The notes under the pieces: generated by a model | Told to the model about the DNA's origin: nothing | Database searches by the model: none | The model's input: only the letters and a program-made list of their open reading frames with translations | Translations under genes and position numbers: made by a program | NCBI RefSeq assembly: GCF_032062105.1 | Contig: NW_026925206.1 | Location: forward strand, 62,001 to 126,000 | DNA from: Saccostrea cucullata | Taxonomy: Eukaryota | Length of the DNA: 64,000 nucleotides | Direction: 5' to 3' | Part shown: positions 1,072-16,453 of the stretch, piece by piece | Layout of the letters: each line of letters starts with the position of its first letter | Position numbering within the stretch: the first letter of the stretch is position 1

Positions 1072-4000
1072 ATGTTACTAAATTTGCTGACTTTCTTCGT
1101 AATAATTCATGGTAAGAAACATACCTCATTGTGTGTTATTTTGTTTTGTTACTTTTTTGAAAATTGCATACGATAAAACCCAAAATGATAACCCAATAGT
1201 AATAACTAGGCCTAAAACCAGTAGGCCTAGCCTTCTGAATATCGAAAATTTTTATTTGTTTGTGTTTTGTTCAAGAAACCCCTATTTTCACTGCATTTGT
1301 TTTGTTATAAATTAGACCTATTGTTCTATTTCTTAATAAATAAGGTTTATGTTCGAACACATGCACATGTTCTGTAATAATTACAATAAAAAATTAAATG
1401 AATTAGACAGTATCCTCCCTCTATTCTCTAAATAGAAATTATATGGAGAGGCATATGGATTTAAGCTTTTGATACATGTGCACTTCTCTAAAGAGAAATC
1501 TGGTCCTCCATGTACTTTTGGAATAGGGAATGTCCTCTCAAAATTATGTTGTACATACCACAAAGCTTGACAGCTAGTATGTACCTAAAATCAATAATTT
1601 TATTCTCCCCTCCCCATCTCTCTTCTTCAGGCTCATTTTGTAGTTCTGTTTTGAGAAGAAAATATTAGATGCATCGGTGTAGCCTGATGATCAAAGTCTA
1701 AGCTGATCAATATGATAATTTCTAGAATGATCTGATGTCATTTGAAATGGTGATTTAAACTGTACCATGTTTACAGTAAATAACTGCATTATGCATCTCA
1801 CCAAATTATATGCATATGGTAAAGATACATAATAGTCTTTTGTTGCCCTTGTGTGGCAGTGGTAAGAGTATTTGCTGGAGTTGCGAAGTAAGGAATTGAT
1901 CCTTATGTCACAGGTTCAGATCCCAAAGAAAAAGATCCCTCACTGCTTAATGGCCCTGAGTGCAGAGTATCTGTAGCTATATAAGACAAAATTTGCAGTT
2001 ATCCACTGGCAAATGGTGGCGCTGAACAAATCTCATAAGGGACATTAAACAGTATACAAACAAACAAAACATAATAGTTTTATTCAATGAAGTTGCATTT
2101 CACACAGAGGTCTTTACTTTGCACTTGCATACATGCCAACTTTCCCGATTTAGGCGGGATCCTCCCGATTTTACCCTTTCATCCCGCCTTCCCGATCAGG
2201 AGAGAAAAATTGCCCTAATTTCCCAATTTGTAAAAATTCACCCAAAATTTCCGATTTTATAAGTTTCCCTATACCGCTGAATTTTGTCAATTGGGATAAC
2301 AATATCAGACTTGTTTATTCAATGCACACAGATAAGTTTCATTGTTTATTTAGGTGTTAATCAGCCACAGGAAATCACTTCACGCTTGAACGCATGTCCA
2401 GGTACAGGTAGCTTATAGCTTGGGGCAGTTAATTAGGGGATTGTCTTTTCAGTTAAAAGGGTACGCAAGGTGAAACACATAATAATTGTTAGTCATTTTA
2501 TTGAAAACATAAATTAAAGACAACTAAATAATAACTAGCTGCAGATCTGTAGCGTTATGGTTTTATATATTTGTCTTTGACCATAACGCTACAGATCCCT
2601 TAGTGCAAAAAAGGTGCAATTTACGGCGCAATATTTTTTGCGCACTTTTGGGGAGAATTTCTCCACTTCCTAGCTTTGGTCAATCAACTACCTTTCACTT
2701 TCTAATTCTAGACACATTCTGTAGCCAATATGTATAGTTTATCCACCTCCCAACCATTTATAGTTGCATGTCTCTACAGGCAATAAAGCTGGATATGAAT
2801 TTTCAGATAAATTTAACAAATAATTTTAATCAAGCGAGTTTATCACTTGTAGAGACGACTATAAAGGGTTGGGAGATGGATAAAATATACAGATTAATTA
2901 AATAATGTGTCTAGAATTAGGGGTTGAAAGGTAGTTGATTGAACGATGCTGAAAAGTGGAGAAATTCTCCCCAAAATAGCGCAAAAAATATTGCTCCGTA
3001 AATTGCACCTTTTTTGCACTACGGGATCTGTAGCGTTATGGTCAAAGACAAATATATAAAACCATAACGCTACAGATCTGCAGCTAAATAATAACCAAAC
3101 CATAAAATTGGAATCCAAAGAGATCGTTATTTGAAAACGAAAGTAGAAAACTACAAAGCATAGCTGCTGACTTTATCTACCTATAATTAAAAAATATTGT
3201 AAAGTTTGCCAGTTAAGGTTATCCGATCCTCAGGTTCCGAAAATCAGGCATTAAGTAATTGAAAATGCTCACAAAGACGTCTCTAAATTCTCAAATTAAA
3301 ATGTATTTACCCACGGTGTTTCTTTAAATTTCATCTTTAAATTTAATCATATTATATAGGGAAAATTAGTAAATCTCAAATATTTTTTTCAGGAAATGCG
3401 ATTTGAACTACCTACTGCATATTTTTTAATTGATAATTGATCAAGAAATACATTTTAGGAATATAAATCATAGGTATCCAGGCTTTTAAAGAAAATTGCA
3501 TGAATTTTACACTTATTTAGTACTTTACTTTCTCTTTCTTACTTCCATCGTTTCATAATGCATAGTGTATGAAGTGTTTCCTTTCAAAGAAAACACCGTA
3601 AATCACTTCTAATTTCAAATCATGCTTATAAACATTGGTAACTAAGGCTAAATTAAAAGAAATTTGATTTCTTTAAAATATGCAAGGTTTATTTAATGTT
3701 ATGAGGTACAAAAGTCAAATTTTTTTTATACCGTTTGTTAAAACTTTAAAGAGCATTGAATCATACGTAGAGGCATAAAATGAAAATTGTTGCATAAAAA
3801 AATTTCAATTTCAAGCTTTATTTAAAGACTTTTTGAATTAAATTATAAATTTAGGAGTTATCCTTCCTGGCTGAGGATCGTATATCCTTAAAATAACATG
3901 AAAAAAATCCTGATGAAATAATAAAGTCTGTGTCAATTAGAATTTCTTTTCCCTCCCTTCTCCCAAAAGTAATTAATATTGTATGCATAAGTGACTACGA

Positions 4001-7000
4001 AATACCCACATAGCACCATCAAGCCTGCCAAAGTTTGACTGTAAAAAAAATAATTTTCCCAGGATAGGTGGTATCTTTGTGTTAGAAAATTGATGATTTA
4101 ATTCTTCAAACCTGATGGTTTATTTCTTTGAATTGTTTTGTGTGTGACATAAAATTAAGTGTTTTAATGATATGTAACAGGAAAGGAGAAAATGCATGGC
4201 TGGACCGGGAATCGAACCTGGGACCCCTGTATCTCTAGTCAGGTGCTCTACCAACTGAGCTGTCCAGGCCGATATCCACGGCCCAAACCATTACATTCCT
4301 CCCTCCTTAAATGGTCTTCGTCCTCGAAGACACAACCCAAGTTCTTATTGCCCCTGGCAGGACTTTCACCTGCAATTCCAGGGGTGGTCAACGACACCAA
4401 ATCTGTAACAGGGAAGGAGAAAATGCATGGCTGGACCGGGAATCGAACCTGGGACCCCTGTATCTCTAGTCAGGTGCTCTACCAACTGAGCTATCCAGGC
4501 CGATATCCACAACCCAAACCATTACATTCCTCCCTCCTTAAACAGTCTTCGACCTCGAAGACACAAGTTGTAGGGCCCTGTCAGGAATTACTAATTTACA
4601 CATACACTGTAACCTGAACAAGGCACCAAATGTAATGGGAGAGGAGAAAATGCAGCGGACCAGACCGGGATTCGAACCCGGGCCCCCTGAAACTCCAGTC
4701 AGGTGCTCTACCAACTGAGCTATCTGGCCAACAGGTTCGAATCCCGGTCTGGTCCGCTGCATTTTCTCCTCTTCCGTTACATTTGGTGCCGTGCCATGCC
4801 CTGGAATTGACAGGTGAAAGACCTGACAGGGATTCTGGGTTGGGGTCTTTGGAGGGCCAAAGACCTTTAAGGAGGGAGGAATGTGGCGGTCAGCCGGGTT
4901 CGATCGCCGGTGGCCAGATAGCTCAGTTGGTAGAGCACCTGACCGGAGTTTCAGGGGGCCCGGGTTCGGATCCCGGTCTGGTCCGCTGCATTTTCTCCTC
5001 TCCCATTACAGATAAATGTACATACCATGAGGAACAAACTTTCTCATCTCCCACACAAAAAAATAAATGCATTGCAATTTCTCAAAATTTCTTTAAATTT
5101 AATATCTGATTAGAATTTCTAATTAATTAAAATATAAAAATCTCAAAAATGTTCCCAGAAACAGTACTTTACGTATCAAAAGTTGTACAATTTTCAATTT
5201 TTCATCAATTGAAATTATGTGTCTTAGCTTGTAAAAAAAAAGTTTACATATGTAACTAAATATCCCTTCTTTAGTGAGAGAGGCACCTATTTGAGCAAAA
5301 AATATTTCAATTTTGGAAAGAAAAACCTTATTTTTGTGTTATTTTTATCTTTTAGTAGTATTAATAAGTGATATTGATTATATTATAAATTTTAAAAAAA
5401 GGACCATGTCATAATCATTTAATTTCACGACAAAATGTTGCGAATTTAAAGCTATGAAAAATGTCGTCACGCGCAAAATCCCCCATGGGAATTTTCAAAA
5501 GTTGGCATGTATGCACTTGTCACTGCATAATTGTAACAGGTGAGCAGAAATACAAAGAATCAGGATTTGAACCCGCTCCCCCCTTGAATCTTCAGTCAGG
5601 TGCCCTTCCCACTTAGCTATCTGGCCACTGGCCATCAAACCTGTCTGAGACACAGACCATTACATTATGATATGAAGCTTTCAGGAAAAGTACACTTATA
5701 TGGATGGACAGAGAGGAATACTTGGAAGGGAATGTTTACTGTTGTAGTTTTACAATGGGAATATTGATGTTAAAGCAATGGTGTTCTTATTGTATACTTA
5801 TAACTTGAAAAACAGATCTGTTTAAATTTTAGAAAAAACAATGCCTCGATCTTTCTATACTTATATTGTTTCAGTTTTCCAATACACACTATAATTTACT
5901 TGACACATTGATTTCTTGCTTAGTATCAATTGTTTGTACGTATTTTAATAATAAACAAAAAGTTCATTAATCATACCAGTAAATGATCATTATTGGGCAT
6001 GGTTACAGAGTGATCAAGATGTGTCAGAGTTTTTTTTCCCCCTCTAACCCCATGACACACGAGGGTAGTGGCGGGATGCACATTACCTGGGTGCATAATT
6101 GATTAATTAACAGTAGCATGCTTCTGAGTTACTTTATGATGTTCATGTTTAAAGGAGATAATCATTGGCAAATCTCTTAGGATTATTTGGTTGATGCATT
6201 TTTCATAAGGAGATCTAGTCATGGACCCCTAAAGGAAAAAAAATGTTACAGCAAAGCCTTTTGATTAAATTGATGAATTGTAGAACTGAGGAAAATTACT
6301 CTCAAAGGAATTCAGACAGATCCATCTTTAAAGAAAGAAAAATTCATACATATATATCTCATTTTTCAAATGTGTATATATTATGTTCATTATCATGGTT
6401 ACATTAACGATATAGTATTGATCTTTACATTTGAAAGAGGAGATAAAGAGAAAATAAGAAAGGGAGATAATTAAGAGAGAGGGGGATAATAATGATTGAA
6501 ATGAATTCATGTCCCGAGGTATAAAATAACGAGGAAGTATTCATTATCCTGAGCTTGCTCAAGTGACTAAACAGCATTTCTCAGTAATCATGAATGTCTT
6601 TTTTTCTAATCAAAAGTCAGTAAAGATGTGAAATACAATACCACATAGCAAAATTTTAAATTAAAATCATTGATGAAGATAATGCAATGTTAATTGAGAA
6701 GGACACTCCTCCTTAAAATTGTTTGGTTTACCCAATCAGATCTAGATCACTTGATCAATCATTGTGTAAACTTTAGAAAAGAAATAGAATAGAAATAATC
6801 ATGTGATAAAAGAATGTGACTATTACTATTATCATTCATGTTAATTAAATTTTCATGACTCTTTAAATAATTCCATTCTTTCTGAATATGCTCCATTTAA
6901 GAGCTGAAGTGTGATGATGCTAATAATCAGCTAAATCAATATGTCTCTCTGTCTCTTCCTTCAGTGACACTGAGCCTATTGACATTGAGGGGCCCATATA

Positions 7001-10000
7001 ACCACACTGCAGTGGTCCAGGACAATGTAACGCTGAGCTGTAAGCTGTTAAAGGATGGAGAAACTGTCATCAATCTTCATATAGTGGGAGAACCCTATAA
7101 ACTGGTCTGGAATTTTACAGGTAGGAAATTAATTCTCTCAGCTACCATTTTATAAGTAGAAAATTCTCCCTAGCGTTTCCATGTATCCATCTTTTTAATA
7201 AAATCTATTTTATTTTGTGTTCTTTTATTGTTCCTATTACTGTGAAAAAATCTATTATATTATCTAGGCCATTCATCATCAGATAATTTATTAAACCACC
7301 CAATTTGGTCAAAAAAATATTCATATGTCTAAGATGTATATTCACTAGGCTTAATCATTGATTTCAAAGAAAATTTCAAAGAAAAAAAAGAATCTGCCGA
7401 AAATTAAATCTTCGAAGGATTGGATGCTTTTCATATTCTCTAAAATTTACTATTTTTCTGATTCGTAATTCATGTTTCCTTGAAATCTGAAAAGGAAGGG
7501 TGTGTAGTAGCTTCTACAAAATTGTAGCGGGATTAGTGTTCATGTACAGAACAAACACAGGTATGCCATATACTCTATGACCTCTAGCTTACATGTACTA
7601 ATTCCCTTGATACAGGTAGTTATACAAGTAACAGATGTACTACTACATGTAGTATGGCCAGGGTGTGAAATATTCTTAAAATATGTAGATCCTGTCCAGT
7701 TATAAGTCAATTGTATTTTAGCACAGGGGCTTGCTCCTGGCATGTATGATTTTATTTATCTAAAAAATCATAAAAGGTAATATTACTATGATTACTGAGC
7801 AAGCCCCTGTGATCTGAGTGAGAAAATAGCTGACTAGCCATGCTCTAAATGGTTCACATAATCATTGCTAATCTAAATGTAATAGCGCCCTTATCTGAAG
7901 TGACTGTACTATGTTTTTTTATTTACCTTCAAAATGGGTAAATATATCGAATGAAAACAATATTATTTATAGTTTTAACCATGATACAACATGGACAATT
8001 AAGAATATGTACAAATATTTTAATTTAAAAATTCCATAAAATTGAAGAAGGTTTGCTATGTCACAATGATCATAGGGGCTTAATATATTCTTTGGCGAGG
8101 CTAATAGATTTATGTAAGATTGTGGAACGTGCAGACACAGACAGGGAGTGTTATATATTACATGTAGATATAAGCATTCATCTGCTCAGTATTAACATTT
8201 CTTAAAGTTATGATTTACATGTATTGTACCTGGCTGCATTATGCATGGGTAGGTTTGTTTTAAAATTGAATGGGAGTCTAAACTGTTGAAAAGTTTAAAA
8301 TACATCACAAATTATGAAATAATTTAACCACTATGAAAAAGCAATAGGTAAACATAAAGTTTGTCATTCAATGAGATATTTCCTCCAGACAACTTAAAGG
8401 AAGTGAAAGCATACAGTGTAGGGACTATAAATCATTTATAGATAGAAAAGAGTTGTCTTATTTACCAGTAGTATTCCAAAATCATTGATAATTTTAGTTC
8501 ACATAATCTAAAAGCTCAAGTGAGATTTTCTGATTACATTTAATTTAGTTGCCCTCATGCCGCAGTGGTTAGAGCATCTGCTCTAGAGTCACAAAGTAAG
8601 GAAATGATCCTTATGTCATAGGTTCCACTCCCACTGTGGGACGTAGAGACTGGTCCTTTGTATAAATCGAGATCCCATGTTGCAGTAGGTGCTGGCATGA
8701 AAAAGATCCCTCACTTTAAATAAGTATAGGACAAAATTTGCAGCTCCGCCTATGTGCCATTTTCATATGAATGAAAAATGATTGAGAGGGATGTTAAACA
8801 ACATACAAACAAACTTGCAAACAAAACTGAATACATTTTGTCTAGCATCTGATTTTTCTGCCCATTTGTCTGCATACTTTTCACAGAGTTGAAGTCTTGA
8901 AAACTCAGTTAAGAATGACTAGTGATGACCCAATTTCTACCAAACTTTTTACAAAGTATATCTTTGGAGAAAGGGTATTTAATTTTGTTTTTAAAAATGC
9001 ACCCTTTTTCAAGGAGAGATAAGGAATTTATTTAGTAAAAAATTAGTGCATAAGCTTTATTCAGAAAAACCAATGGGCCAAAAATATCATGACCTCTGGG
9101 GGTAAGGTAGGGTGGGTCTTAATGGGCAATCAGAGTTATAGAATATGTAAGAAATATTTGGGAAACCCGATAAATTTTAAAATTTTCTTTTCAAGAAAAG
9201 CAAAATCATGATTAGTCTTATTAAAATGAAAGCATCCTGTACGTTGAAGTTTACAGTTCAAATCATGTCCCTCAGGTACTGTAAATCACTTTTTATTCGC
9301 GAGAACTTTATTTTCACGTTATTACGCAAGACAGTAAGCACGCAAAAAATTCATTCTCGCGTATAATAGTATTCCTTAAGATTATATAAAGAAATATTAA
9401 CAATTCATGAAAATTATGTCTCGCTTATAAAGAGTCAATGACTATCTCGCGAAAATAAGGTGTCACGAAAATTAAGTGATCTACAGTATACTATGGGTTC
9501 ACAATGATAGTGGTAATATTTTTGTTAAGGACATTATGAACTTAAAAAGGAAAAAAAGACCTATGTTGTCCTTAGTGTACATGTACATCTAAGAGCACAT
9601 GATATGAATTTCAATTTTCAAAATTTAATAAAATGTATTCAGATTGATCGTTTTAAATGCTAAATATGCAGAATAATTTGATTGTGTGGGTATTTTGCAG
9701 GGGTAGGAGAAACAGAACCTAGGACAATACATGTCGTCTCCAGCAATGGATTAGCTCTACCTAGCTTCTCTGTAAAGTTCAACAATACTCACTACCAGAG
9801 CGACTCTGACACTTCTCTTCACATCCTAAATGTCTCTTTCTCAGACGCTGGAACTTATACCTGTTCTCTTAACAGTGAGAGCAAGTCATTTGAGCTGTAT
9901 GTTATAGGTAAGGTGACATTTTGTATGGTGTAGTCATTATAATTACAGTTTTTGGATAGGCTGACAACTGAACTGAGCTAGGATAAATGAATGTTCCTGG

Positions 10001-13000
10001 ACAATCCAGGCACATATTTATTAATTTAAACATATTAAACAACATTGAAGTTTTTCAATTTCTGAACATCAGTAATTTCAAAAATGATTAAATTTTCGAG
10101 ACACCCTAAGCCGGTTTCAGGACAAAGAAAAAGTTCCTTAAGATTTTCTTAAAGGTTTTAAAGTACCATATCTTTTTAAAGAATACATCTATGTTCTTTC
10201 TTTCATTTTCCATACTGGTTACAAGTATTTAAATACATGAGGTTTAATTGTTTCTTTCAGAAAAACCTTACTGCCATAATTATAACAGTAGTGTGATAGT
10301 GAACCAGCAGGCCTATTTTGACTGCAGTGTCAATTTTCATGGAAATGATCGCCCTGAAGTGAGTTGGAAACATGGCAACAAAGAGCTGAATTTCTCTGTT
10401 GATTTCGAAAATGAAACTTACAGCTTAGCTCGTATGTCATTGGTTGCTTCAGAGGAAGATGATGGAAAGGTGTTCATTTGTCATGTTACATTTCCTTATG
10501 TCCATAATGGTTTTATCTGCCAAGCTCTCCCAAAGCTGAAAGTTTATTGTAAGTAAACTTCATACTAGTATGACATTAGGAATTTGATATAAGCATGGGA
10601 AAAAGTAATTGAGCACATGTATGTATTTGGTAATTGACCTTATCATTGGTCAGGTGGTTCTGAAGAAGAATATATTAAAAGGATTTTCCCTTTATATCCC
10701 TATGTCAATGTTAATTAGATCTGTATAAAAGTAATTAATTCAGAATTGAGAAAGTGATATCTATAAAGCATTTGTTCTGAATTAGATATGTATAAAAATT
10801 ATGAATTCAGAATTGAGAAAGTGATATCTATAAAGTCCTTGATTTGCACACTTATATTTACAGTTCCTGTGAAAGAGACAGACATTATTCTTAGTCCATA
10901 CAAAAAGGAGTATGAAGAGGGAAGCAATATTCTTCTTCGTTGTGTTGCCATAGGAGAGCCCCACCCCCGTTACAATTGGACATTCACCCCCCTTTCTGAC
11001 CCCCTTAATGAATCTGTGAGGTCAACCCATCCAGCGTACAAAATCGTCAATGCCCATAGAAATGACATAGGAAACTATACATGCATTGTTCACAATGAAA
11101 TTAATCATACAGTGTATACAGACACTAAAGTTGTCTTCTTGAATATAATAGGTAAGAATGAATTAATTTCTGTTAAAATACAAAGAGAATGCACTAAGAG
11201 GTTTTAAAGAGAAGAATTTTTATTTCAAACTATTGTCATTTTAATATGGCATGGAAATTAAGATAGCATCAATTATTCCAAAATATTTTAGTACAGTGTT
11301 AGGAGTAATTATATAAAAATCACCCCACCCCATGTCTTCTGTTTTAAAGCAATGGAATATAGTCAAATTATTATGCAGTTTGAATATAATGCATCATTTC
11401 AGGCAGAAGAGAAAGTAATATTGTCTAAAAAAAAAATTGTAGAAAATAAAGTAACAACAGTAAAACCTAAATACAGAATGATGCCTAAGCCAACAGAGGA
11501 CAAAGGAGATGGAGACATTAACTGTAAGTAATTATCTGAGAAATTTTCTTATGGATCATGGGATGACATCTTATGTGATAAAGTTGATTTTCCACTTGGT
11601 ACATGTATTTGTAAATTTTTGAATGTGTCTCAATCCCTGCAGTACATGTACAGTTGATACTGTCACTATCTGTCATGATGTAGGTTTGATACAGGGATAC
11701 ACTGATGATGATTCTGTCAATATAATGTATTTACAGTTTAATACAGATGTACTGATGATTAGGTTTTTGTTTCAGTCAATGCCTATGCTGTAGGAGCTGT
11801 TGTTAGTTCACTGCTAGCCATTCTGCTGATTGTAGTCTTCATCCTGCTGGCCATCAAATTCAGGGTACGGGTGATATAAAGGAGTTTCATTGAACATCAC
11901 ATGTAGTGTTTTGTACATAACAGCTGGAACTAGATAAAATATGCATGAAATAAATTTTGATATCTTACTTAAGACATTAATTAGTAAAAATTGATGTTTT
12001 CCTCTGGTAATTAGGCAAGAGAGCAGAAATACAGAGAAGGCATGTCCCTGGTGCAGGATGATTTTACAGATGATCAGGAATTGTTAGATGAGGACATGAT
12101 AACAGCAAATGGAGGGACCGAGGAGGTAGGAGGGACATGTACACGGTTATATTCATCTTACATGAATCGTAGATTTCTTTAAAAACAAATTTTCATTTCA
12201 ATATTGTGCATAATGATATGTATCTTAAAGTTCCAGAGCTTGTATAGATACATGTATAATTACATTACTGAGTCTGAAAAAACAAAATCATGATTTTTTT
12301 CTGATAGTTTTGTTTGAATTTAGTATGTTATACTCCATTGTAGACCCAAGGTCAGTACAGGAGACTTGGTCAGTATTGGGAAATCCCTAAGAGAGATGTT
12401 CGCCTGATGGACCTGATTGCTACAGGGTCGTACTGTGAAGTCTGGAGGGGGAGGATGAGGAAACACTCAGACAGTACAGATGTTCTTAGGGTGGCCATCA
12501 AGAAAATGCTAGGTACAGGTTAAAAAATGTAGTATTTCCCTTTGCAAAGAACCTTGATGGGGTTAAAAGCAATCTTAGAGTTTCATGGATATCATTCAGT
12601 TATGCTAGTTCATCTGTTCATGAGGTAGTAAGAGTCTGTCTCTGTTTGTTCAGATGATGCATCAGAAGTGGGCAGGAAGTTCTTTCTGGCAGAGATGGAA
12701 GTGATGAAAACATTGAAGGCTCACAGTAATGTGATCACCCTTATTGGATGTTACACATTAACTGGTAATTCTTTATAAATAATATTTCAAACTTAATGGA
12801 TATATTAACCAGTTGGTTATGGCAAAAGAAAAAGAAACATGCCTAGTATGCATTATAGAAAATGATTTAATTCATGTTTGGTAAACAAAAAATCTTGATT
12901 TTCCTAAAATAGACTAGATATTAAATAAAAGTTTGTTATATCCTGATTTATAGCTGCATTTGTAATAATTATGTCAAACATTTGCATTACTAAGTAATTC

Positions 13001-14644
13001 ACATTCTTACCTTTATTTTGCATATTTGAAGTTGCTTTAGAAACGTTATCTATGAAAAGCACTAGAAAAATTGAAACTTATAGGATTTTCTTAATCTGGT
13101 GTTCATTTTGACTACAACTTATCATTTAATTCATTCAATTCAGAACCTTGGATGCTGATGCTGGAGTATGCACATGAGGGAACCTTGCAGAAATACCTGA
13201 AGAAACACAGACCTGGTTCACAGCGTGTTGAGATTCAATCTCAGGAATCGGTCAGACTTAAGAATAACAGGATAGATGCCAAGAAACTCCTAACTCTGGC
13301 TTCCCAGGTCATCAGTGGATTGCTGCATTTGACAAAATATAAGGTAGGTTTTCAAATCAAATGTATTGCAAATCATAGAACAGAAGTTTGATCATAGAAT
13401 TTATAGGTCATGTGTGATTTCATAAAAATTTGTGTCAACTTTGCTTAGAGGTGGAAAAAACACCTTATTTACATTCTATTCTAAAAGTAAATTTATTGAA
13501 TTTTTTTCAATAATCACAATTATAGAGTATCTTTTTGTACATTGTATATTGAAGAATAAAAAGAATTATGTTTTATTCTACCAAAACTGTGTTTTTATAC
13601 CACATATAGCTCCTATACTACCGACTATCTGCATCCAGTGTCCTTGTGGCCAAAGGAGGAGTGTGCAAGTTATCAGGGTTTATGTTTCAGAAAGAAATAA
13701 CAGAGAGGAATTTGTATGAAAAGGTAATGCCACTTTTATTGTAGTTTTCTACAAAATGATGCTGTATTACAGAAAAGTAGATCAATCTCTTTTATGACTG
13801 TTGATTTTTGATGCCAATTTACTTACAGGAATCTCTACCTGTTCGCTGCATGTCACCAGAATCTTTGTCACAAAATATATTTGATACAAAGACCGACACA
13901 TATGCCTTTGGTATTTTGTTATGGCAGATTATACATTTTGGTAAGAATTTATCATAGGACTGGTATAACATTCTTGGTATTTGGGTTAACAATAGCCACA
14001 GTACTTGTTACACCCCTCTCAGAATTAAAATAAAATATATCAAATTTTGAACCTCTGTGAAGAACAATTTATAACCTTATAAAAATAAATTTATTTCCTA
14101 TAGGATTAAGGCCGTATCCCTCTATGGACATTGAAGAAGTGAAAGAGAAAGTTCTCTCAGGATACCGCATGCCTCAGCCACCGCACTGTAGTTCTGAATT
14201 GTATGTTAAAGAAATGTTTATATTTCTCTGTCTAAATTCAATGAAATGTTGGGAAAATGAAAAATTCACTGCAATTGCATCATTCTTCATTGTATTTGTA
14301 AACATATGCATTGTTAACAATTTTTTGAAAATAAAAATGGAGGCTAAGTATTTAATTTATTTCAATTTCCTATGCTATTATGTCTGCTTAAAAAGTTATT
14401 ATTGAATTATAATTTTATTTAAGACGACCACTTCAGTTTTAAGATAAAGACTCTTCGTCTGTATTTAAGGTTTGCCTTAATGGATAGATGTTGGAGTGTA
14501 AATCCAGATGAGAGACCCCTGTACCCTGATATCTTACAAGCCCTGTCTGTCCTACAAACCAACAGTGACACAAACATTGTTCTGGAGGATCTTCCAGGCC
14601 TGTCAACCTCTGAGAGTGAGACCGAAACAGAATGTAATCCATAG
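1072..14644 (+). CDS. Ig-domain receptor tyrosine kinase-like protein (FGFR/RET-like fold), predicted pseudokinase, ~745 aa, 15 coding exons
   Basis: GT-AG exons: 1072-1111 (signal peptide MLLNLLTFFVIIH), 6965-7120, 9701-9907 (Ig1 ..DAGTYTC), 10261-10548 (Ig2 ..DDGKVFIC), 10864-11151 (Ig3 ..DIGNYTC), 11443-11523, 11776-11864 (TM AYAVGAVVSSLLAILLIVVFILLAI), 12015-12125, 12344-12512 (YWEIP..VAIK), 12654-12764, 13144-13343, 13610-13723, 13829-13940 (LPVRCMSPES..DTYAFGILLWQI), 14104-14200 (PYP..GYRMPQPPHC), 14470-14644 (CW..PDERP). All phases are compatible; total 2238 nt. Exon 1 and the 11443 acceptor are the least certain. Confidence 0.9.
1845..2070 (+). mobile_element. tRNA-derived SINE (Deu/Nin-like core), degenerate
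   Basis: A-box-like gtggcagtggtaagag, B-box-like ggttcagatccc, core aaagatccctcactgct, (CAAA)n tail; homologous to 8551-8827. Confidence 0.7.
2536..3086. mobile_element. Foldback MITE, Mutator/MULE-type
   Basis: ~185-bp TIRs starting TAGCTGCAGATCTGTAGCG; perfect 9-bp TSD AATAATAAC (2527-2535, 3087-3095). Confidence 0.88.
3217..3887. mobile_element. Non-autonomous TTAA-TSD DNA transposon (Kolobok-like)
   Basis: TTAA on both sides; imperfect TIR GGTTATCCGATCCTCAG / CTGAGGATCGTATATCC; a related terminus occurs at ~55372-55440. Confidence 0.72.
4173..5010. mobile_element. Composite of miniature LTR retrotransposons (TRIMs) with tRNA-like sequence in the LTRs (Helenus-like)
   Basis: LTRs with TGT..ACA termini at 4173-4295 (-), 4404-4526 (-), 4631-~4730 (-, truncated), 4732-4781 (+, 3' half) and 4882-5010 (+). 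PBS TGGTGCCGTG at 4784-4793, with variants at ~4389-4399 and ~4619-4628 on -. PPT TTAAGGAGGGAGGAA at ~4867-4881, and at 4296-4310 and 4527-4541 on -. GATA flanks both outer ends. Confidence 0.85.
4912..4984 (+). pseudogene. tRNA-like cassette inside a TRIM LTR (Pol III A/B boxes), not a canonical tRNA gene
   Basis: Acceptor stem GGCCAGA/TCTGGTC, A box TAGCTCAGTTGG, T-loop GGTTCGGATCC; the anticodon arm is irregular and differs between copies. Confidence 0.75.
5532..5664 (-). mobile_element. Degenerate solo LTR of the same tRNA-containing TRIM group
   Basis: TGTAACAGG...CCATTACA termini and a decayed tRNA-like core; flanks TAAT/TTAT match 3 of 4. Confidence 0.7.
8551..8827 (+). mobile_element. 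tRNA-derived SINE (Deu/Nin-like core)
   Basis: A box gccgcagtggttagag, B-box-like ggttccactccc, core gtaggtgctggcatgaaaaagatccc, (ACAA)n tail. Confidence 0.75.
9279..9486. mobile_element. Tc1/mariner-type MITE (TA TSD)
   Basis: TA|CTGTAAATCACT...AGTGATCTACAG|TA with internal CGCGA repeats; same type as 57870-58086. Confidence 0.8.
10713..10836. repeat. Intronic tandem duplication, ~68-bp period
   Basis: attagat.tgtataaaa...aattcagaattgagaaagtgatatctataaag occurs twice. Confidence 0.85.
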
Positions 14645-14708
14645 AAGGTCATCTTGATAATCCAAAGAAGGTCATCTGGATTATCCATAGAAGGTCATCT
14701 GGATTACG
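14635..14708 (+). repeat. 3 x 23-bp tandem repeat overlapping the RTK stop codon
   Basis: ccatagaaggtcatcttgataat / ccaaagaaggtcatctggattat / ccatagaaggtcatctggattac. Confidence 0.9.
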
Positions 14709-14807
14709 TAATCTGTTAAGATACTCGTATATTGATGAGGCACTCACAAATTGAACTTGATTTTTTTTTTCTTAAATACATTAATTTTGCCATTGACACA
14801 AGGATAA

Positions 14808-15442
14808 TTTTTAGCTCACCCAAGCCAAAAGCTCACTGTAGCTTTTTTCTGATTAAGGAATGTCCAGAGTCTGTCTGAGTGAACTTTTCACATATTCAAC
14901 TTCTTCTCCAGAACTATTTAATTAATGAATATCTTGTTTCTTAGTGCTAGGTGGGGGGGGGGGGGGGGCACAATAGGGGTCAATGATTTATATTAAAATT
15001 TAGGGGGATGTGTGTAGAAAGTTTCTACTCTGAAGAACAGCAGGGTCACAATCAAGTAGTGAAGGTAGACATTTTACCTGCCCTCTGACAAGGTTGGGGG
15101 TCACAGTAGGTATTAAAAATTACATGTAAATGGAAATATTTAGGGAAAAATTGGACAAGTAAGTGTCTTACAAGCATGACTGCAGGAACTACACTTAAGC
15201 CTTGGTAAATAGCAAAGTTTTATACAAATATAATTATACTAAATCATGAAGTCTACAATTTGTAAAGTTGACCTAGAGCGTTTAGTACATTACAATGATT
15301 TATAATAATTATTGTTGAAATCTTTGATGCTAATTTGGTGACCACAAAAGGGGATTTCATACATTAGAGAAAACATGTACTTATTTATTAGGAAGAGCAT
15401 AATGACTCAGATGAGCATTATGGCCCATGGGCTTTTTTGTTT
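14808..15442 (+). mobile_element. Helentron-derived non-autonomous HINE just downstream of the RTK stop
   Basis: 5' ttttagctcacc..aaaagctca; 3' ctcagatgagcattatggcccatgggct..tgtttt (subterminal inverted repeat plus hairpin); T-rich insertion site. Confidence 0.7.
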
Positions 15443-16453
15443 TACTTTGTATCACATATGATAGAAAGGTATTTGTACATTTGATATTTATCATTTATAA
15501 CTTTAATTACAGTAAAACCTGCAGATCTCATGGTATACTTTTGTTTTATAATCACAGAATACATTTCACATATAATTGCAAAGGTTAGACAAATGAATTG
15601 AATTTTTAAAATAACTGTTTAATAATTGTGCGTTTCTTTATCATACATCATATAATTCATATACTAAGGTTATTATCATGTACCTTCACTTTTTGGGTGC
15701 ATTTTCTGAGAGAAAGTTGATTTTACACAGAATGAGAAGTCTTTCCACACAATATTATATAATTAAAAGGTAGATATGGCATCAGGAATTGGGGGAAAAA
15801 TGGACTGATTAAAATATTTGTATGCATAATATTAAACTTTGTAGTATCTGAATCACCTTTCCCGTCCAATATAAAATAATAGAACTAGAAATTTAGATAT
15901 AATATCTTTTATTCACATTCACATATCAAGAACTCTGTCCACTTCTGTATATTCATATTTTTATATCTACTGACATTACATGCCATTGTTCAGTTCTTAT
16001 TAGATATAAAGAATTTAGAAATTTTCAAGTCAATTAATTTTTGCATATTTAGGGCAACATATGCATATGCATCTATATGCTTTTAAAGTGCCTAAATCCC
16101 CTCAAAATGTATTCCTATGCTAAAATCATGTAAACTAACCAATTTAAAATAGCTGACAAAGGATTTATACTTGTGCATTTTGGTTCATTTGAGTTTAAAA
16201 ATAATATACATTTTACATGCATAAGTTTCAAGTTTTACAATTAAACTTACCATTGAGGTTAGCAGGCATTACACTTAAAAATTATTAAAGCGTATTATAA
16301 ACATTTATTTAAACTTAATTTGAAGAAGGACATTTTTGTGAAAACATTGCATGCACATATCTGATAAAAAGAAAAATTGACTATAAAATTTCCAATTCAC
16401 CTAGAGTAGGTGTATTTTTACCGGTATCTGTCTAACATTTACTTGTATATTTA

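What the first reader, a model, noticed from the sequence alone, without database searches (positions are those of the whole stretch)
12344..14644. Intact receptor with a thoroughly dead tyrosine kinase domain
Seen: Gly-loop LGEGAFG->IATGSYC, catalytic loop HRDLAARN->YYRLSASS and DFG->GFM. The VAIK lysine, the alphaC glutamate (FLAEMEVM), an activation-loop Tyr (NLYEK) and the C-lobe motifs are retained, and all 15 exons splice in frame. Known: vertebrate RTK pseudokinases (PTK7, RYK, ROR1/2, ERBB3, EPHB6, EPHA10) have different ectodomains, and FGFRL1 has three Ig domains but no kinase domain. Inference: a lineage-specific three-Ig pseudo-RTK acting as a scaffold, decoy or co-receptor.
Basis: partly seen in the sequence, partly recalled or inferred. 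Interest (0 to 1): 0.75.

Follow-up and report, generated by a model that had tools for sequence, protein, structure and literature searches.

The report
Mollusc receptor with dead kinase domain
This oyster gene encodes a cell-surface receptor whose tyrosine-kinase domain has lost its catalytic residues, and the same dead-kinase receptor is kept in bivalves, snails and octopuses, so it probably signals without enzyme activity.

Summary
Window 1072-14644 (+) holds a 15-exon gene for a signal peptide, three Ig domains, one membrane helix and a tyrosine-kinase-like domain. That domain reads IATGSYC for the Gly-loop, YYRLSASS for HRDLAARN and GFM for DFG. The VAIK Lys, alphaC Glu and an activation-loop Tyr are kept.

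- **Transcripts:** Spliced contigs in 4 of 4 runs laid, from four studies of a ~95%-identical relative, join the last 13 exons exactly as predicted. This includes 13343|13610 and 13723|13829. No other HRD/DFG exon exists.
- **Family:** Orthologues carry the same losses in 21 of 21 sequences with that region, from bivalves, gastropods and cephalopods. Sources name them inconsistently: FGFR-like, PDGFR-beta, VEGFR2 or Cad96Ca.
- **Placement:** The family is one clade (100/100) on a long stem beside FGFR/PDGFR-type kinases, not inside FGFR (AU p 0.0015). The genome has a separate canonical FGFR.
- **Selection:** Kinase exons k1-k3 show 12 synonymous and 0 replacement differences among those listed.
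- **Literature:** I found no paper describing this family.

Verdict: a real, expressed, mollusc-wide receptor pseudokinase. It is a new member of a known kind; how it signals is inferred.

The parts
1072..1111 (+). Exon 1: start codon and signal peptide (MLLNLLTFFVIIH, then one base of a split codon); the donor GTAAGA follows
   Evidence: Script scan for ATG, a hydrophobic run and G|GT. 7 of 13 residues are identical to the N-terminus of P0002. Not confirmed by reads.
6964..7121 (+). Exon 2: first half of Ig1 (V-set)
   Evidence: Sequence. 46 of 51 residues are identical to P0002 15-65. The loose ends of the transcript contigs before 9692 match its 3' end.
9701..9907 (+). Exon 3: second half of Ig1 (V-set, E 1.8e-08)
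   Evidence: Pfam; joint to 10261 in 4 of 4 runs.
10261..10548 (+). Exon 4: Ig2, with an extra Cys pair that is conserved across the family and brackets the domain
   Evidence: Pfam I-set 8.6e-06; joints; C139, C156 and C208 invariant and C221 nearly invariant.
10864..11151 (+). Exon 5: Ig3 (Ig_3 / I-set)
   Evidence: Pfam 1.2e-11; joints.
11443..11523 (+). Exon 6: extracellular stalk
   Evidence: Joints 11151|11443 and 11523|11776 in 4 of 4 runs; sequence.
11776..11864 (+). Exon 7: transmembrane helix (NAYAVGAVVSSLLAILLIVVFILLAIKFR), the most conserved segment of the family
   Evidence: Sequence; joints; 29 of 29 residues identical to P0002; family mean identity 63%.
12015..12125 (+). Exon 8: juxtamembrane segment with the acidic motif DDQELLDED
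   Evidence: Sequence; joints; D398, D402-D408 nearly invariant.
12344..12512 (+). Exon 9 (k1): conserved juxtamembrane Tyr, WEIP, degenerate Gly-loop IATGSYC, VAIK Lys
   Evidence: 55 of 55 aligned residues identical to P0002.
12654..12764 (+). Exon 10 (k2): alphaC helix with the retained Glu (FFLAEMEVMK), then beta4-5
13144..13343 (+). Exon 11 (k3): hinge, a family-specific insert, alphaE
   Evidence: This piece was the query of the exhaustive search.
13610..13723 (+). Exon 12 (k4): dead catalytic loop YYRLSASS (for HRDLAARN), GFM (for DFG), activation-loop Tyr (ERNLYEK)
   Evidence: No Pfam match. Joints 13343|13610 and 13723|13829 in 4 of 4 runs.
13829..13940 (+). Exon 13 (k5): PVRCMSPES (APE region) and TDTYAFGILLWQI (alphaF)
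   Evidence: PF07714 1.4e-08; PDB matches; joints.
14104..14200 (+). Exon 14 (k6): alphaG region (GYRMPQPPHC)
14470..14644 (+). Exon 15 (k7): alphaH-I (CWSVNPDERP), C-terminal tail with the conserved L(E/D)DLP motif, stop TAG
   Evidence: P730 nearly invariant.

Best explanation
Window 1072-14644 (+) is the single-copy oyster orthologue of an unnamed, mollusc-wide family of type-I membrane receptors.

Shown:
- The protein has a signal peptide, three Ig domains (V-set, then two C2/I-type), a short stalk, a strongly conserved membrane helix, an acidic juxtamembrane motif and a kinase fold of the FGFR/RET/PDGFR type.
- The catalytic Asp is Arg (HRD reads xYR). The Mg-binding Asp of DFG is Gly. 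The third Gly of the Gly-loop is gone.
- The gene is intact.
- In a close relative the orthologue is transcribed and spliced exactly as this gene model predicts.
- The gene is under purifying selection, strongest in the dead kinase and the membrane helix.
- The losses were already present before bivalves, gastropods and cephalopods split.

Inferred:
- The domain cannot transfer phosphate. It works as a folded pseudokinase.
- The ectodomain, which in the model looks like three-Ig adhesion molecules, binds a ligand or a partner on another cell.
- The receptor pairs with an active tyrosine kinase through its membrane helix and/or its pseudokinase domain.
- It then acts as an allosteric partner and as a docking platform. 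The partner would phosphorylate it in trans on the invariant activation-loop Tyr and the nearly invariant juxtamembrane Tyr.
- The retained Lys-Glu pair may still allow nucleotide binding without metal, or may simply hold an active-like shape.
For: - **Anatomy and motifs:**
- **Splicing:** all 12 joints from Ig1b to k7 are GT..AG and appear in contigs of 4 of 4 runs laid, from four studies. The contigs are 2.0-3.3 kb, except for one short 550-letter piece in X3.
- **No rival exon:** no other kinase-like exon and no HRD or DFG motif lies on the + strand of 11000-15500. Five canonical RTK queries hit only these exons.
- **Family motifs:** 21 of 21 members with the region lack the HRD Asp (20 Arg, 1 Gln) and lack the DFG Asp. 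22 of 22 lack the third Gly and keep the VAIK Lys and alphaC Glu. 21 of 21 keep the activation-loop Tyr.
- **Named members:** 16 bivalve, 5 gastropod and 3 cephalopod species.
- **This copy fits the family:** it keeps 50 of 51 family-invariant residues, and the 51st is a Gly in a split codon.
- **Tree:** the family clade has 100/100 support and a stem of 1.18, with inner branching that follows cephalopods, gastropods and bivalves.
- **Selection:** in k1-k3 the listed differences are 12 synonymous and 0 replacement. In the ectodomain they are 14 and 12.
- **Domain identity across the family:** membrane helix 63%, kinase 57%, juxtamembrane 53%, ectodomain 29%.
- **Fold:** with a 52-row alignment, the AlphaFold2 model of the cytoplasmic part of the S. 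echinata orthologue has pLDDT 85 and pTM 0.81, with canonical kinase secondary structure. Its nearest solved folds are FGFR1-4 and RET, TM 0.80-0.88.
- **Ectodomain model:** pLDDT is about 85-94. Its nearest folds are nectin, Necl, MAG, SIRP-alpha and RAGE three-Ig ectodomains, TM 0.31-0.59 normalised to the target (nectins and Necls 0.42-0.59), at 15-18% identity.
- **Precedent:** a review states that human receptor pseudokinases signal by allostery, membrane-helix dimerisation and docking (PMC13259870, passages read).
Against: - No assay: loss of catalysis is inferred from motifs alone, and kinases lacking canonical residues have been found active before.
- The transcripts come from a relative about 95% identical to the window. 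No run held even a tenth of the sampled words of the stretch (shares 0.05-0.08).
- The substitution counts use only the 40 of 62 differences that one search printed, and none from k4-k7.
- No partner, ligand, tissue or phosphosite is known.
- The first AlphaFold2 run (23-row alignment) modelled the N-lobe badly, with pLDDT under 50. The good second model leans on canonical kinases in its alignment.
- The ectodomain's likeness to adhesion molecules is generic for chains of Ig domains.
- The oyster branch has drifted further than other members (GFM, PVRC, DTY, LLWQ). That could mean weaker constraint in oysters.
Confidence: 0.72

Rival explanations
1. It is still an enzyme: an atypical, weakly active tyrosine kinase that uses the retained Lys-Glu pair, the invariant Tyr-Arg of the altered catalytic loop, or a different metal geometry.
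For: The VAIK Lys, the alphaC Glu and the second Gly of the Gly-loop are invariant. The kinase core is the second most conserved part of the protein. The replacement catalytic loop is itself conserved: Y584 is invariant and R585 nearly so, so it is not random decay. From recall, not from a call here: kinases once called dead, such as WNK, CASK and HER3, showed some activity.
Against: Both acidic residues that position the substrate hydroxyl and the Mg-ATP are gone in 21 of 21 members. The catalytic-loop Asn is kept in only 4 of 21. A positively charged Arg sits where the catalytic base should be. Pfam finds no kinase signal in exon k4.
Confidence: 0.1
2. It is simply the mollusc orthologue of a characterised receptor (FGFR, PTK7/Off-track, RET/Cad96Ca or VEGFR/PDGFR), badly diverged, as the database names suggest.
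For: Sources call members FGFR1/2/3/4-like, egl-15, PDGFR-beta-like, VEGFR2 or Cad96Ca. FGFR1 is the best PDB sequence match at 172 bits, with PDGFR-alpha at 159. FGFR and RET are the best structural matches. Three of its six introns inside the kinase domain sit at the same place and phase as in the oyster FGFR gene.
Against: The same genome has a canonical FGFR with GEGAFG, VAVK, HRDLAARN and DFG on contig C22168. The AU test rejects family plus bilaterian FGFR as one clade (p 0.0015). Sister placement to the whole FGFR/PDGFR/FLT3-like group is 87/88. There is no acid box between Ig1 and Ig2. PTK7 has HKD and ALG motifs (PMC13259870 Table 2); its seven Ig domains are recalled, not from a call. 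A scallop survey found FGFR, VEGFR, ROR and PTK7 candidates plus four further Ig+kinase genes that it left unnamed as possibly mollusc-specific (PMC11814522, section 2.2).
Confidence: 0.08
3. It is a decaying pseudogene or an annotation artefact of one assembly.
For: The assembly holds three copies. The copy on C4723 shows a TAA and indels in exon k3.
Against: The 13 exons walked have no in-frame stop. Spliced transcripts were seen in four studies. Orthologues occur across three mollusc classes with 51 invariant residues. Only synonymous differences were listed in k1-k3. The copies are about 99% identical through the introns too, so they are haplotigs, and C4723 has 15-16 gap openings as a poorly polished contig would.
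Confidence: 0.01

Closest known systems
FGFR and RET kinase domains (receptor tyrosine kinases of the FGFR/RET/PDGFR/VEGFR group)
   Same: They are the best sequence match (FGFR1 at 172 bits) and the best structural match (FGFR1-4 and RET, TM 0.80-0.88 at 27-31% identity). The layout is the same: three Ig domains, one membrane helix and a kinase domain. Three intron positions and phases are shared with the oyster FGFR gene.
   Different: The catalytic Asp, the DFG Asp and the third Gly-loop Gly are lost. There is no acid box. The ectodomain shows no significant sequence match to FGFR D1-D3 (stretch scores 0.8-6.9 bits). The family is a separate clade, and the AU test rejects union with bilaterian FGFR. 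A true FGFR coexists in the same genome.
[quoted passage not shown]
   Same: All are membrane receptors with a kinase fold that lacks catalytic residues, and they signal by allostery, docking and membrane-helix dimerisation (PMC13259870, passages and Table 2). EphA10 also reads GFG for DFG and has lost the HRD Asp.
   Different: The ectodomains differ (Eph, EGFR-type, WIF, Fz/kringle). By recall, PTK7 has seven Ig domains. All eight human proteins keep the His of HRD, and all keep Arg or Lys after it (Table 2). Here all three positions are replaced (x-Y-R). In my tree RYK, ROR and INSR lie outside the group that holds this family. PTK7 and the Eph and EGFR families were not in the tree.
FGFRL1 / nou-darake type decoys
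   Same: Three-Ig, single-pass receptors thought to modulate signalling without catalysis.
   Different: By recall, FGFRL1 has no kinase-like domain at all. This protein keeps a complete, conserved kinase fold of about 290 residues.
C. elegans KIN-16 family pair OLD-1 / FLOR-1
   Same: This is a lineage-specific RTK family in which an active receptor pairs with a pseudokinase member (PMC10523662, start of the abstract as shown in the search listing). It is a precedent for the proposed pairing.
   Different: It is nematode-specific and belongs to an expanded family. Here each species shows one orthologue, and the active partner is unknown. An Acropora protein named kin-16-like sits elsewhere in the tree.

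Membership tests
Protein tyrosine kinase fold (Pfam PF07714) | Colinear match to the kinase profile over both lobes | tested here: met
   6 of 7 exon pieces match PF07714 in order (E 1.4e-08 to 0.16). Only k3 and k5 reach the curated score on their own, and k4 has no match. P0002 carries PF07714 in the precomputed list. The model has canonical kinase secondary structure at pLDDT 85.
Pseudokinase (lacks at least one of VAIK Lys, HRD Asp, DFG Asp) | HRD Asp absent | tested here: met
   YYR aligns to HRD. Arg in 20 and Gln in 1 of 21 family members.
Pseudokinase (lacks at least one of VAIK Lys, HRD Asp, DFG Asp) | DFG Asp absent | tested here: met
   GFM in the window and in S. echinata; GFG in the other 20 of 21.
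Pseudokinase (lacks at least one of VAIK Lys, HRD Asp, DFG Asp) | No phosphotransfer activity | not testable with these tools
   Needs a kinase assay on purified protein.
FGFR family | Kinase domain groups within the FGFR clade | tested here: not met
   The family is its own 100/100 clade outside the bilaterian FGFRs. AU p 0.0015 against union. The tested group was named after the tree had been seen.
FGFR family | Acid box between Ig1 and Ig2, and an active HRDLAARN/DFG kinase | tested here: not met
   Ig1 runs straight into Ig2 (…FELYVIG / EKPYCHN…) with no acidic run. The catalytic motifs are lost. The genome's real FGFR has them.
FGFR family | Binds FGF | not testable with these tools
   No ligand test is possible. 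The ectodomain has no significant sequence match to FGFR D2-D3.
PTK7 / Off-track | Seven Ig domains (recalled); HKD kept and DFG reading ALG | tested here: not met
   Three Ig domains. The motifs are YYR and GFM, against HKD and ALG in Table 2 of PMC13259870.
PTK7 / Off-track | Kinase domain groups with PTK7 | not tested
   No PTK7 sequence was available to me. No PTK7 chain is among the best 60 PDB sequence matches or the 50 listed structural matches. A scallop survey lists a separate PTK7 candidate (PMC11814522).
RYK / ROR | WIF or Fz/kringle ectodomain, and kinase in the RYK or ROR clade | tested here: not met
   Only Ig domains are present. RYK and ROR rows lie outside the group that holds the family (long-branch warning on RYK+ROR).
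FGFRL1 | No kinase-like domain after the membrane helix (recalled) | tested here: not met
   A complete kinase-like domain is present.
Unnamed mollusc 3-Ig pseudokinase receptor family (P0002, P0030, P0045, P0006, P0021 and others) | Colinear full-length match, family-invariant residues, and the xYR / GF(G/M) motifs | tested here: met
   674 of 734 aligned residues are identical to P0002. 50 of 51 invariant positions are kept, and the last is a Gly in a split codon. Motifs.

The most novel reading that the evidence does not exclude
This could be a previously unrecognised class of animal receptor tyrosine kinase that has been catalytically dead since before the conchiferan molluscs diverged. 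It would be an adhesion-type (nectin-like) three-Ig ectodomain wired to a pseudokinase. Its membrane helix, the most conserved part of the protein, would lock it to an active partner kinase. On that reading molluscs have their own HER3- or PTK7-like allosteric co-receptor for cell-contact signalling.
Probability: 0.3. Interest if true: 0.65.

Novelty: new member of a known kind. Interest (0 to 1): 0.5.

Why it matters
Receptor pseudokinases are a small, much-studied group, eight of them in humans, that show how a dead kinase fold can still signal. This family is a further, independent case. It is kept across three mollusc classes, has a more thoroughly rewritten catalytic loop than any human example, and has an unusually conserved membrane helix.

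It offers a natural experiment on which features of a kinase fold matter when catalysis is gone. It also shows that current database names for these genes are misleading for anyone counting FGF, PDGF or VEGF receptors in molluscs. The names in use include FGFR-like, PDGFR-beta, VEGFR2 and Cad96Ca.

Tried and rejected
- **Alternative catalytic exon:** rejected. A motif scan and tblastn with five canonical RTKs found no other kinase-like exon in the window, and the transcripts join k3-k4-k5 directly.
- **Paralogue expansion in this genome:** rejected. Exons k3 and k4 find only three places, all about 99% identical through the introns, so they are haplotigs. The tool warns that its counts are lower bounds.
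- **Membership in FGFR:** rejected.
- **Exon-by-exon PDB searches:** uninformative for family placement. k5 ranks ALK/ROS/IGF1R first because of the PVRWM-PES words, and k4 gives a single RET match at E 1.5.
- **The two region searches:** biased by their word filter. One search is flooded by IGF1R, and FGFR was largely missed. I therefore used them only as a source of named sequences, not as a ranking.
- **First AlphaFold2 run:** the 23-row alignment gave an unusable N-lobe. I replaced it with a second run using 52 rows.
- **Intron comparison:** made only with the oyster FGFR. My memory of human FGFR, RET and KIT exon sizes was not used as evidence.
- **Range outside Mollusca:** none was seen. 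The exhaustive search with k3 gave 29 hits. The full-length ones that carry a name are all molluscan, apart from one insect protein of 3836 aa matched in 30 short stretches. The remaining 10 short hits were not looked up. A 66-aa query would miss distant members, so absence elsewhere is not shown.
- **Papers:** six searches found no description of this family. I read passages and section 2.2 of PMC11814522, passages of PMC4883820, and passages with Table 2 of PMC13259870. For PMC10523662 I saw only the listing. The supplementary tables of the oyster kinome paper and the scallop paper may list this gene; they were closed.

Full report
**What is in the sequence.**

Reading 12344-14644 on the + strand gives seven exons with GT..AG borders in one continuous frame. 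They end at TAG 14642-14644. They encode a tyrosine-kinase-like domain with these features:
- The Gly-loop reads IATGSYC.
- The beta3 motif is VAIK and alphaC is FFLAEMEVMK.
- The catalytic loop reads YYRLSASS and the DFG triplet reads GFM.
- The activation loop keeps a Tyr (ERNLYEK).
- The C-lobe is recognisable but further altered (PVRCMSPES, TDTYAFG, CWSVNPDERP).

The single PDB sequence match of exon k4 lines YYRLSASS up with HRDLAARN and SGFM with SDFG of RET. At E 1.5 it is weak on its own, but the family alignment below confirms it. Pfam PF07714 matches six of the seven exon pieces in colinear order. It finds nothing in k4, the exon that should hold both catalytic motifs.

Upstream lie:
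- a split V-set Ig domain (6964-7121 and 9701-9907);
- two further Ig domains (10261-10548 and 10864-11151; Pfam);
- a stalk (11443-11523);
- a membrane helix (11776-11864);
- an acidic juxtamembrane exon (12015-12125).

A 13-codon signal-peptide exon at 1072-1111 completes a 15-exon gene.

**Is the exon model real?**

No public run held more than 0.08 of the sampled words of the stretch. I laid four runs from four studies on 9600-14700. Each holds long contigs of 2.0-3.3 kb, about 93-97% identical to the window exon by exon. These contigs skip every predicted intron. All 12 joints from Ig1b to k7 are GT..AG at the predicted bases, including 13343|13610 and 13723|13829. Their loose 5' ends match the end of the Ig1a exon.

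The contigs come from a close relative ('organism A'), not from the window's own genotype. They show that the orthologue is transcribed and spliced this way. Exon 1 and the first joint rest on homology only.

A scan of the + strand of 11000-15500 for HRD- or DFG-like motifs found none. tblastn of five canonical receptor kinases against the whole window hit only the same exons. The 13 exons carry no in-frame stop.

I did not search or fold a joined spliced model. Exon pieces were searched one at a time, and the database orthologue stood in for the whole protein.

**Copies in the genome.**

Exons k3 and k4 occur at three places in the 1.17-Gb assembly. The other two are about 99% identical to the window through the introns as well, so they are haplotigs of one gene. 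The copy on C4723 has many small gaps and a TAA in k3. I take this as poor polishing or an allele, not as a second locus.

**Relatives.**

An exhaustive HMMER search of 1.84 billion representatives with exon k3 found only 29 proteins at E up to 0.001. The full-length ones, of 600-784 residues, all share the architecture. Look-ups and two further searches name them:
- **Bivalves:** Saccostrea echinata, Ostrea edulis, Magallana gigas, Pinctada, Mizuhopecten, Pecten, Argopecten, Ylistrum, Mytilus, Dreissena, Mercenaria, Mactra, Potamilus, Sinanodonta, Tegillarca, Solemya.
- **Gastropods:** Patella, Haliotis, Batillaria, Pomacea, Bradybaena.
- **Cephalopods:** Octopus bimaculoides, O. sinensis, Argonauta.

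The S. echinata protein is 92% identical to the window's exon pieces. The names given by the sources disagree with one another: FGFR1/2/3/4-like, egl-15, PDGFR-beta-like, VEGFR2, Cad96Ca.

The motifs across the family are as follows:

| Feature | Result |
|---|---|
| HRD Asp | missing in 21 of 21 with the region (Arg in 20, Gln in S. echinata) |
| DFG Asp | missing in 21 of 21 (GFG; GFM only in Saccostrea and the window) |
| Third Gly-loop Gly | missing in 22 of 22 |
| VAIK Lys | kept in 22 of 22 |
| alphaC Glu | kept in 22 of 22 |
| Activation-loop Tyr | kept in 21 of 21 |
| Catalytic-loop Asn | kept in 4 of 21 |

The loss of catalytic residues is therefore ancestral to at least the bivalve-gastropod-cephalopod ancestor. 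Oysters show extra drift (PVRC, DTY, LLWQ).

The window keeps 50 of the 51 residues that are invariant in a 23-sequence alignment. The 51st is a Gly encoded across a splice site.

**Constraint.**

One search counted 62 differences between the window and organism A's transcripts and printed 40 of them. Of these 40, 28 are synonymous and 12 are not.
- In kinase exons k1-k3 all 12 are synonymous.
- In the ectodomain the split is 14 to 12, giving pN/pS of about 0.23.
- The 22 unprinted differences and exons k4-k7 are not covered, so this is a sample.

Across the family the mean pairwise identity is 63% in the membrane helix, 57% in the kinase domain, 53% in the juxtamembrane segment, 29% in the ectodomain and 28% in the tail. 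The dead kinase and the membrane helix are thus the most constrained parts. This is the opposite of what a decaying domain would show.

**Placement.**

The best PDB sequence matches of the S. echinata orthologue are FGFR1 (172 bits) and FGFR2, with PDGFR-alpha close behind at 159 bits.

I built a careful maximum-likelihood tree of 42 kinase domains. It held:
- 20 family rows;
- four FGFR or FGFR-like rows;
- PDGFR-beta, a FLT3-like row and a kin-16-like row;
- two gastropod 'FGFR4-like' proteins;
- two unnamed receptor rows from Logan assemblies (one grouped tightly with the tick FGFR) and a nematode receptor row that grouped with INSR/IGF1R;
- IGF1R, INSR, RYK and ROR;
- Src, FRK, Fes, Fer and a choanoflagellate kinase as outgroup.

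The tree puts the family in one clade (100/100) on a stem of 1.18 changes per column. The inner branching follows mollusc classes. The clade is sister (87/88, not starred) to the whole FGFR/PDGFR/FLT3-like group. An AU test rejects joining the family with the bilaterian FGFRs (p 0.0015). That group was named after I had seen the tree.

All eight non-family receptors that I checked carry canonical motifs: HRDLA(A/C)RN and DFG in all eight, and VAVK in seven.

The same genome encodes a canonical FGFR on contig C22168, with GEGAFG, VAVKMLK, HRDLAARN and DFG. Three of the six introns inside the window's kinase domain share place and phase with that gene:
- after VAxK+4, phase 1;
- in the residue after C-x-T-x-x, phase 1;
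- two residues before LPV, phase 0.

The other three do not match, and the FGFR gene has two introns of its own. This fits common descent within the FGFR/RET/PDGFR group but not orthology to FGFR.

PTK7, RET, Tie and VEGFR were not in the tree, because the tools gave me no such sequences. Against PTK7 stand the three Ig domains (not seven, by recall) and the motif pattern (PMC13259870 Table 2). A scallop survey also lists separate FGFR, VEGFR, ROR and PTK7 candidates plus four unnamed Ig+kinase genes that it calls possibly mollusc-specific (PMC11814522 section 2.2).

**Structure models.**

A full-length AlphaFold2 model of the S. echinata orthologue with the 23-row family alignment gave confident Ig domains (pLDDT about 85-94) and C-lobe, but an unusable N-lobe.

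Foldseek matched its ectodomain best to three-Ig adhesion ectodomains: nectins, nectin-like proteins, MAG, SIRP-alpha and RAGE. The TM-score normalised to the target is 0.31-0.59, at 15-18% identity. It did not match FGFR D1-D3. This is a generic likeness and no more than a lead.

A second model, of the cytoplasmic part with a 52-row alignment that includes canonical kinases, reached pLDDT 85 and pTM 0.81 with standard kinase secondary structure. The stretch just after GFM is modelled as a helix. Its nearest solved folds are FGFR1-4 and RET. The domain is therefore predicted to fold as a kinase. The tools do not give coordinates, so I could not inspect the pocket.

**How it most likely works.**

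Shown: the gene is intact, its orthologue in a close relative is expressed and spliced the same way, and it is strongly constrained. It encodes a membrane receptor whose kinase fold lacks the catalytic base and the metal-binding Asp.

Inferred from what is established for receptor pseudokinases (PMC13259870, passages):
- The domain does not phosphorylate. It serves as an allosteric partner and docking platform for an active kinase.
- The invariant activation-loop Tyr and the nearly invariant juxtamembrane Tyr would be trans-phosphorylation sites.
- The exceptionally conserved membrane helix, rich in small residues, would mediate the pairing.
- The retained Lys-Glu pair may support cation-independent nucleotide binding or only a stable conformation.

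I put identity as a conserved receptor pseudokinase at about 0.95, true lack of catalysis at about 0.85, and the co-receptor or scaffold mode at about 0.6.

**Novelty.**

Six literature searches found no description of this family. These included a search for five accession numbers, which found no paper.

The genes are in public databases under misleading automatic names. The kind, receptor pseudokinase, is well known. This is a new, phylum-wide member with an unusually complete rewrite of the catalytic loop.

Noticed in passing
window 4428-4500 (-), 4657-4729 (-), 4912-4984 (+): Three tRNA-like elements with odd four-base anticodon loops lie inside intron 1. Repeated open frames surround them (…GWTGNRTWDPCISSQVLYQLS…), as tRNA-derived SINE or TRIM copies would give.
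   Followed up: partly
G000 contigs C11570:20268-23845 and C4723:1207-4785: The assembly carries three copies of this gene's 3' half, about 99% identical through the introns. They are probably uncollapsed haplotigs. The C4723 copy has 15-16 gap openings and a TAA in exon k3.
   Followed up: partly
window 11776-11864: The membrane helix is the most conserved segment of the whole protein family, with 63% mean identity against 29% for the ectodomain. It is rich in small residues (AVGAVVSS). That is unusual for a single-pass receptor and hints at helix-helix pairing.
   Followed up: partly
G000:C11084:63380-64210 (-) and G000:C128:495649-496527 (+): Two complete kinase domains, 36-39% identical to a tick FGFR, lie in single open frames of 569 and 505 residues without introns. 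They may be single-exon receptor kinase genes.
   Followed up: no
window 14645-14710: Just after the stop codon a unit of about 25 bases (…gaaggtcatct.gat.atcca.a…) is repeated three times. The relative's transcripts stop matching the window at 14679 and continue with a similar repeat unit, so the repeat may differ there.
   Followed up: no
proteins P0114 (Nucella) and P0117 (Babylonia): These gastropod proteins of about 700 residues are named FGFR4-like or hypothetical. They have Ig domains and fully canonical kinase motifs, and they form their own 100/100 pair apart from arthropod FGFRs and from the pseudokinase family. They may be another mollusc receptor kinase lineage or the gastropod FGFR.
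   Followed up: partly
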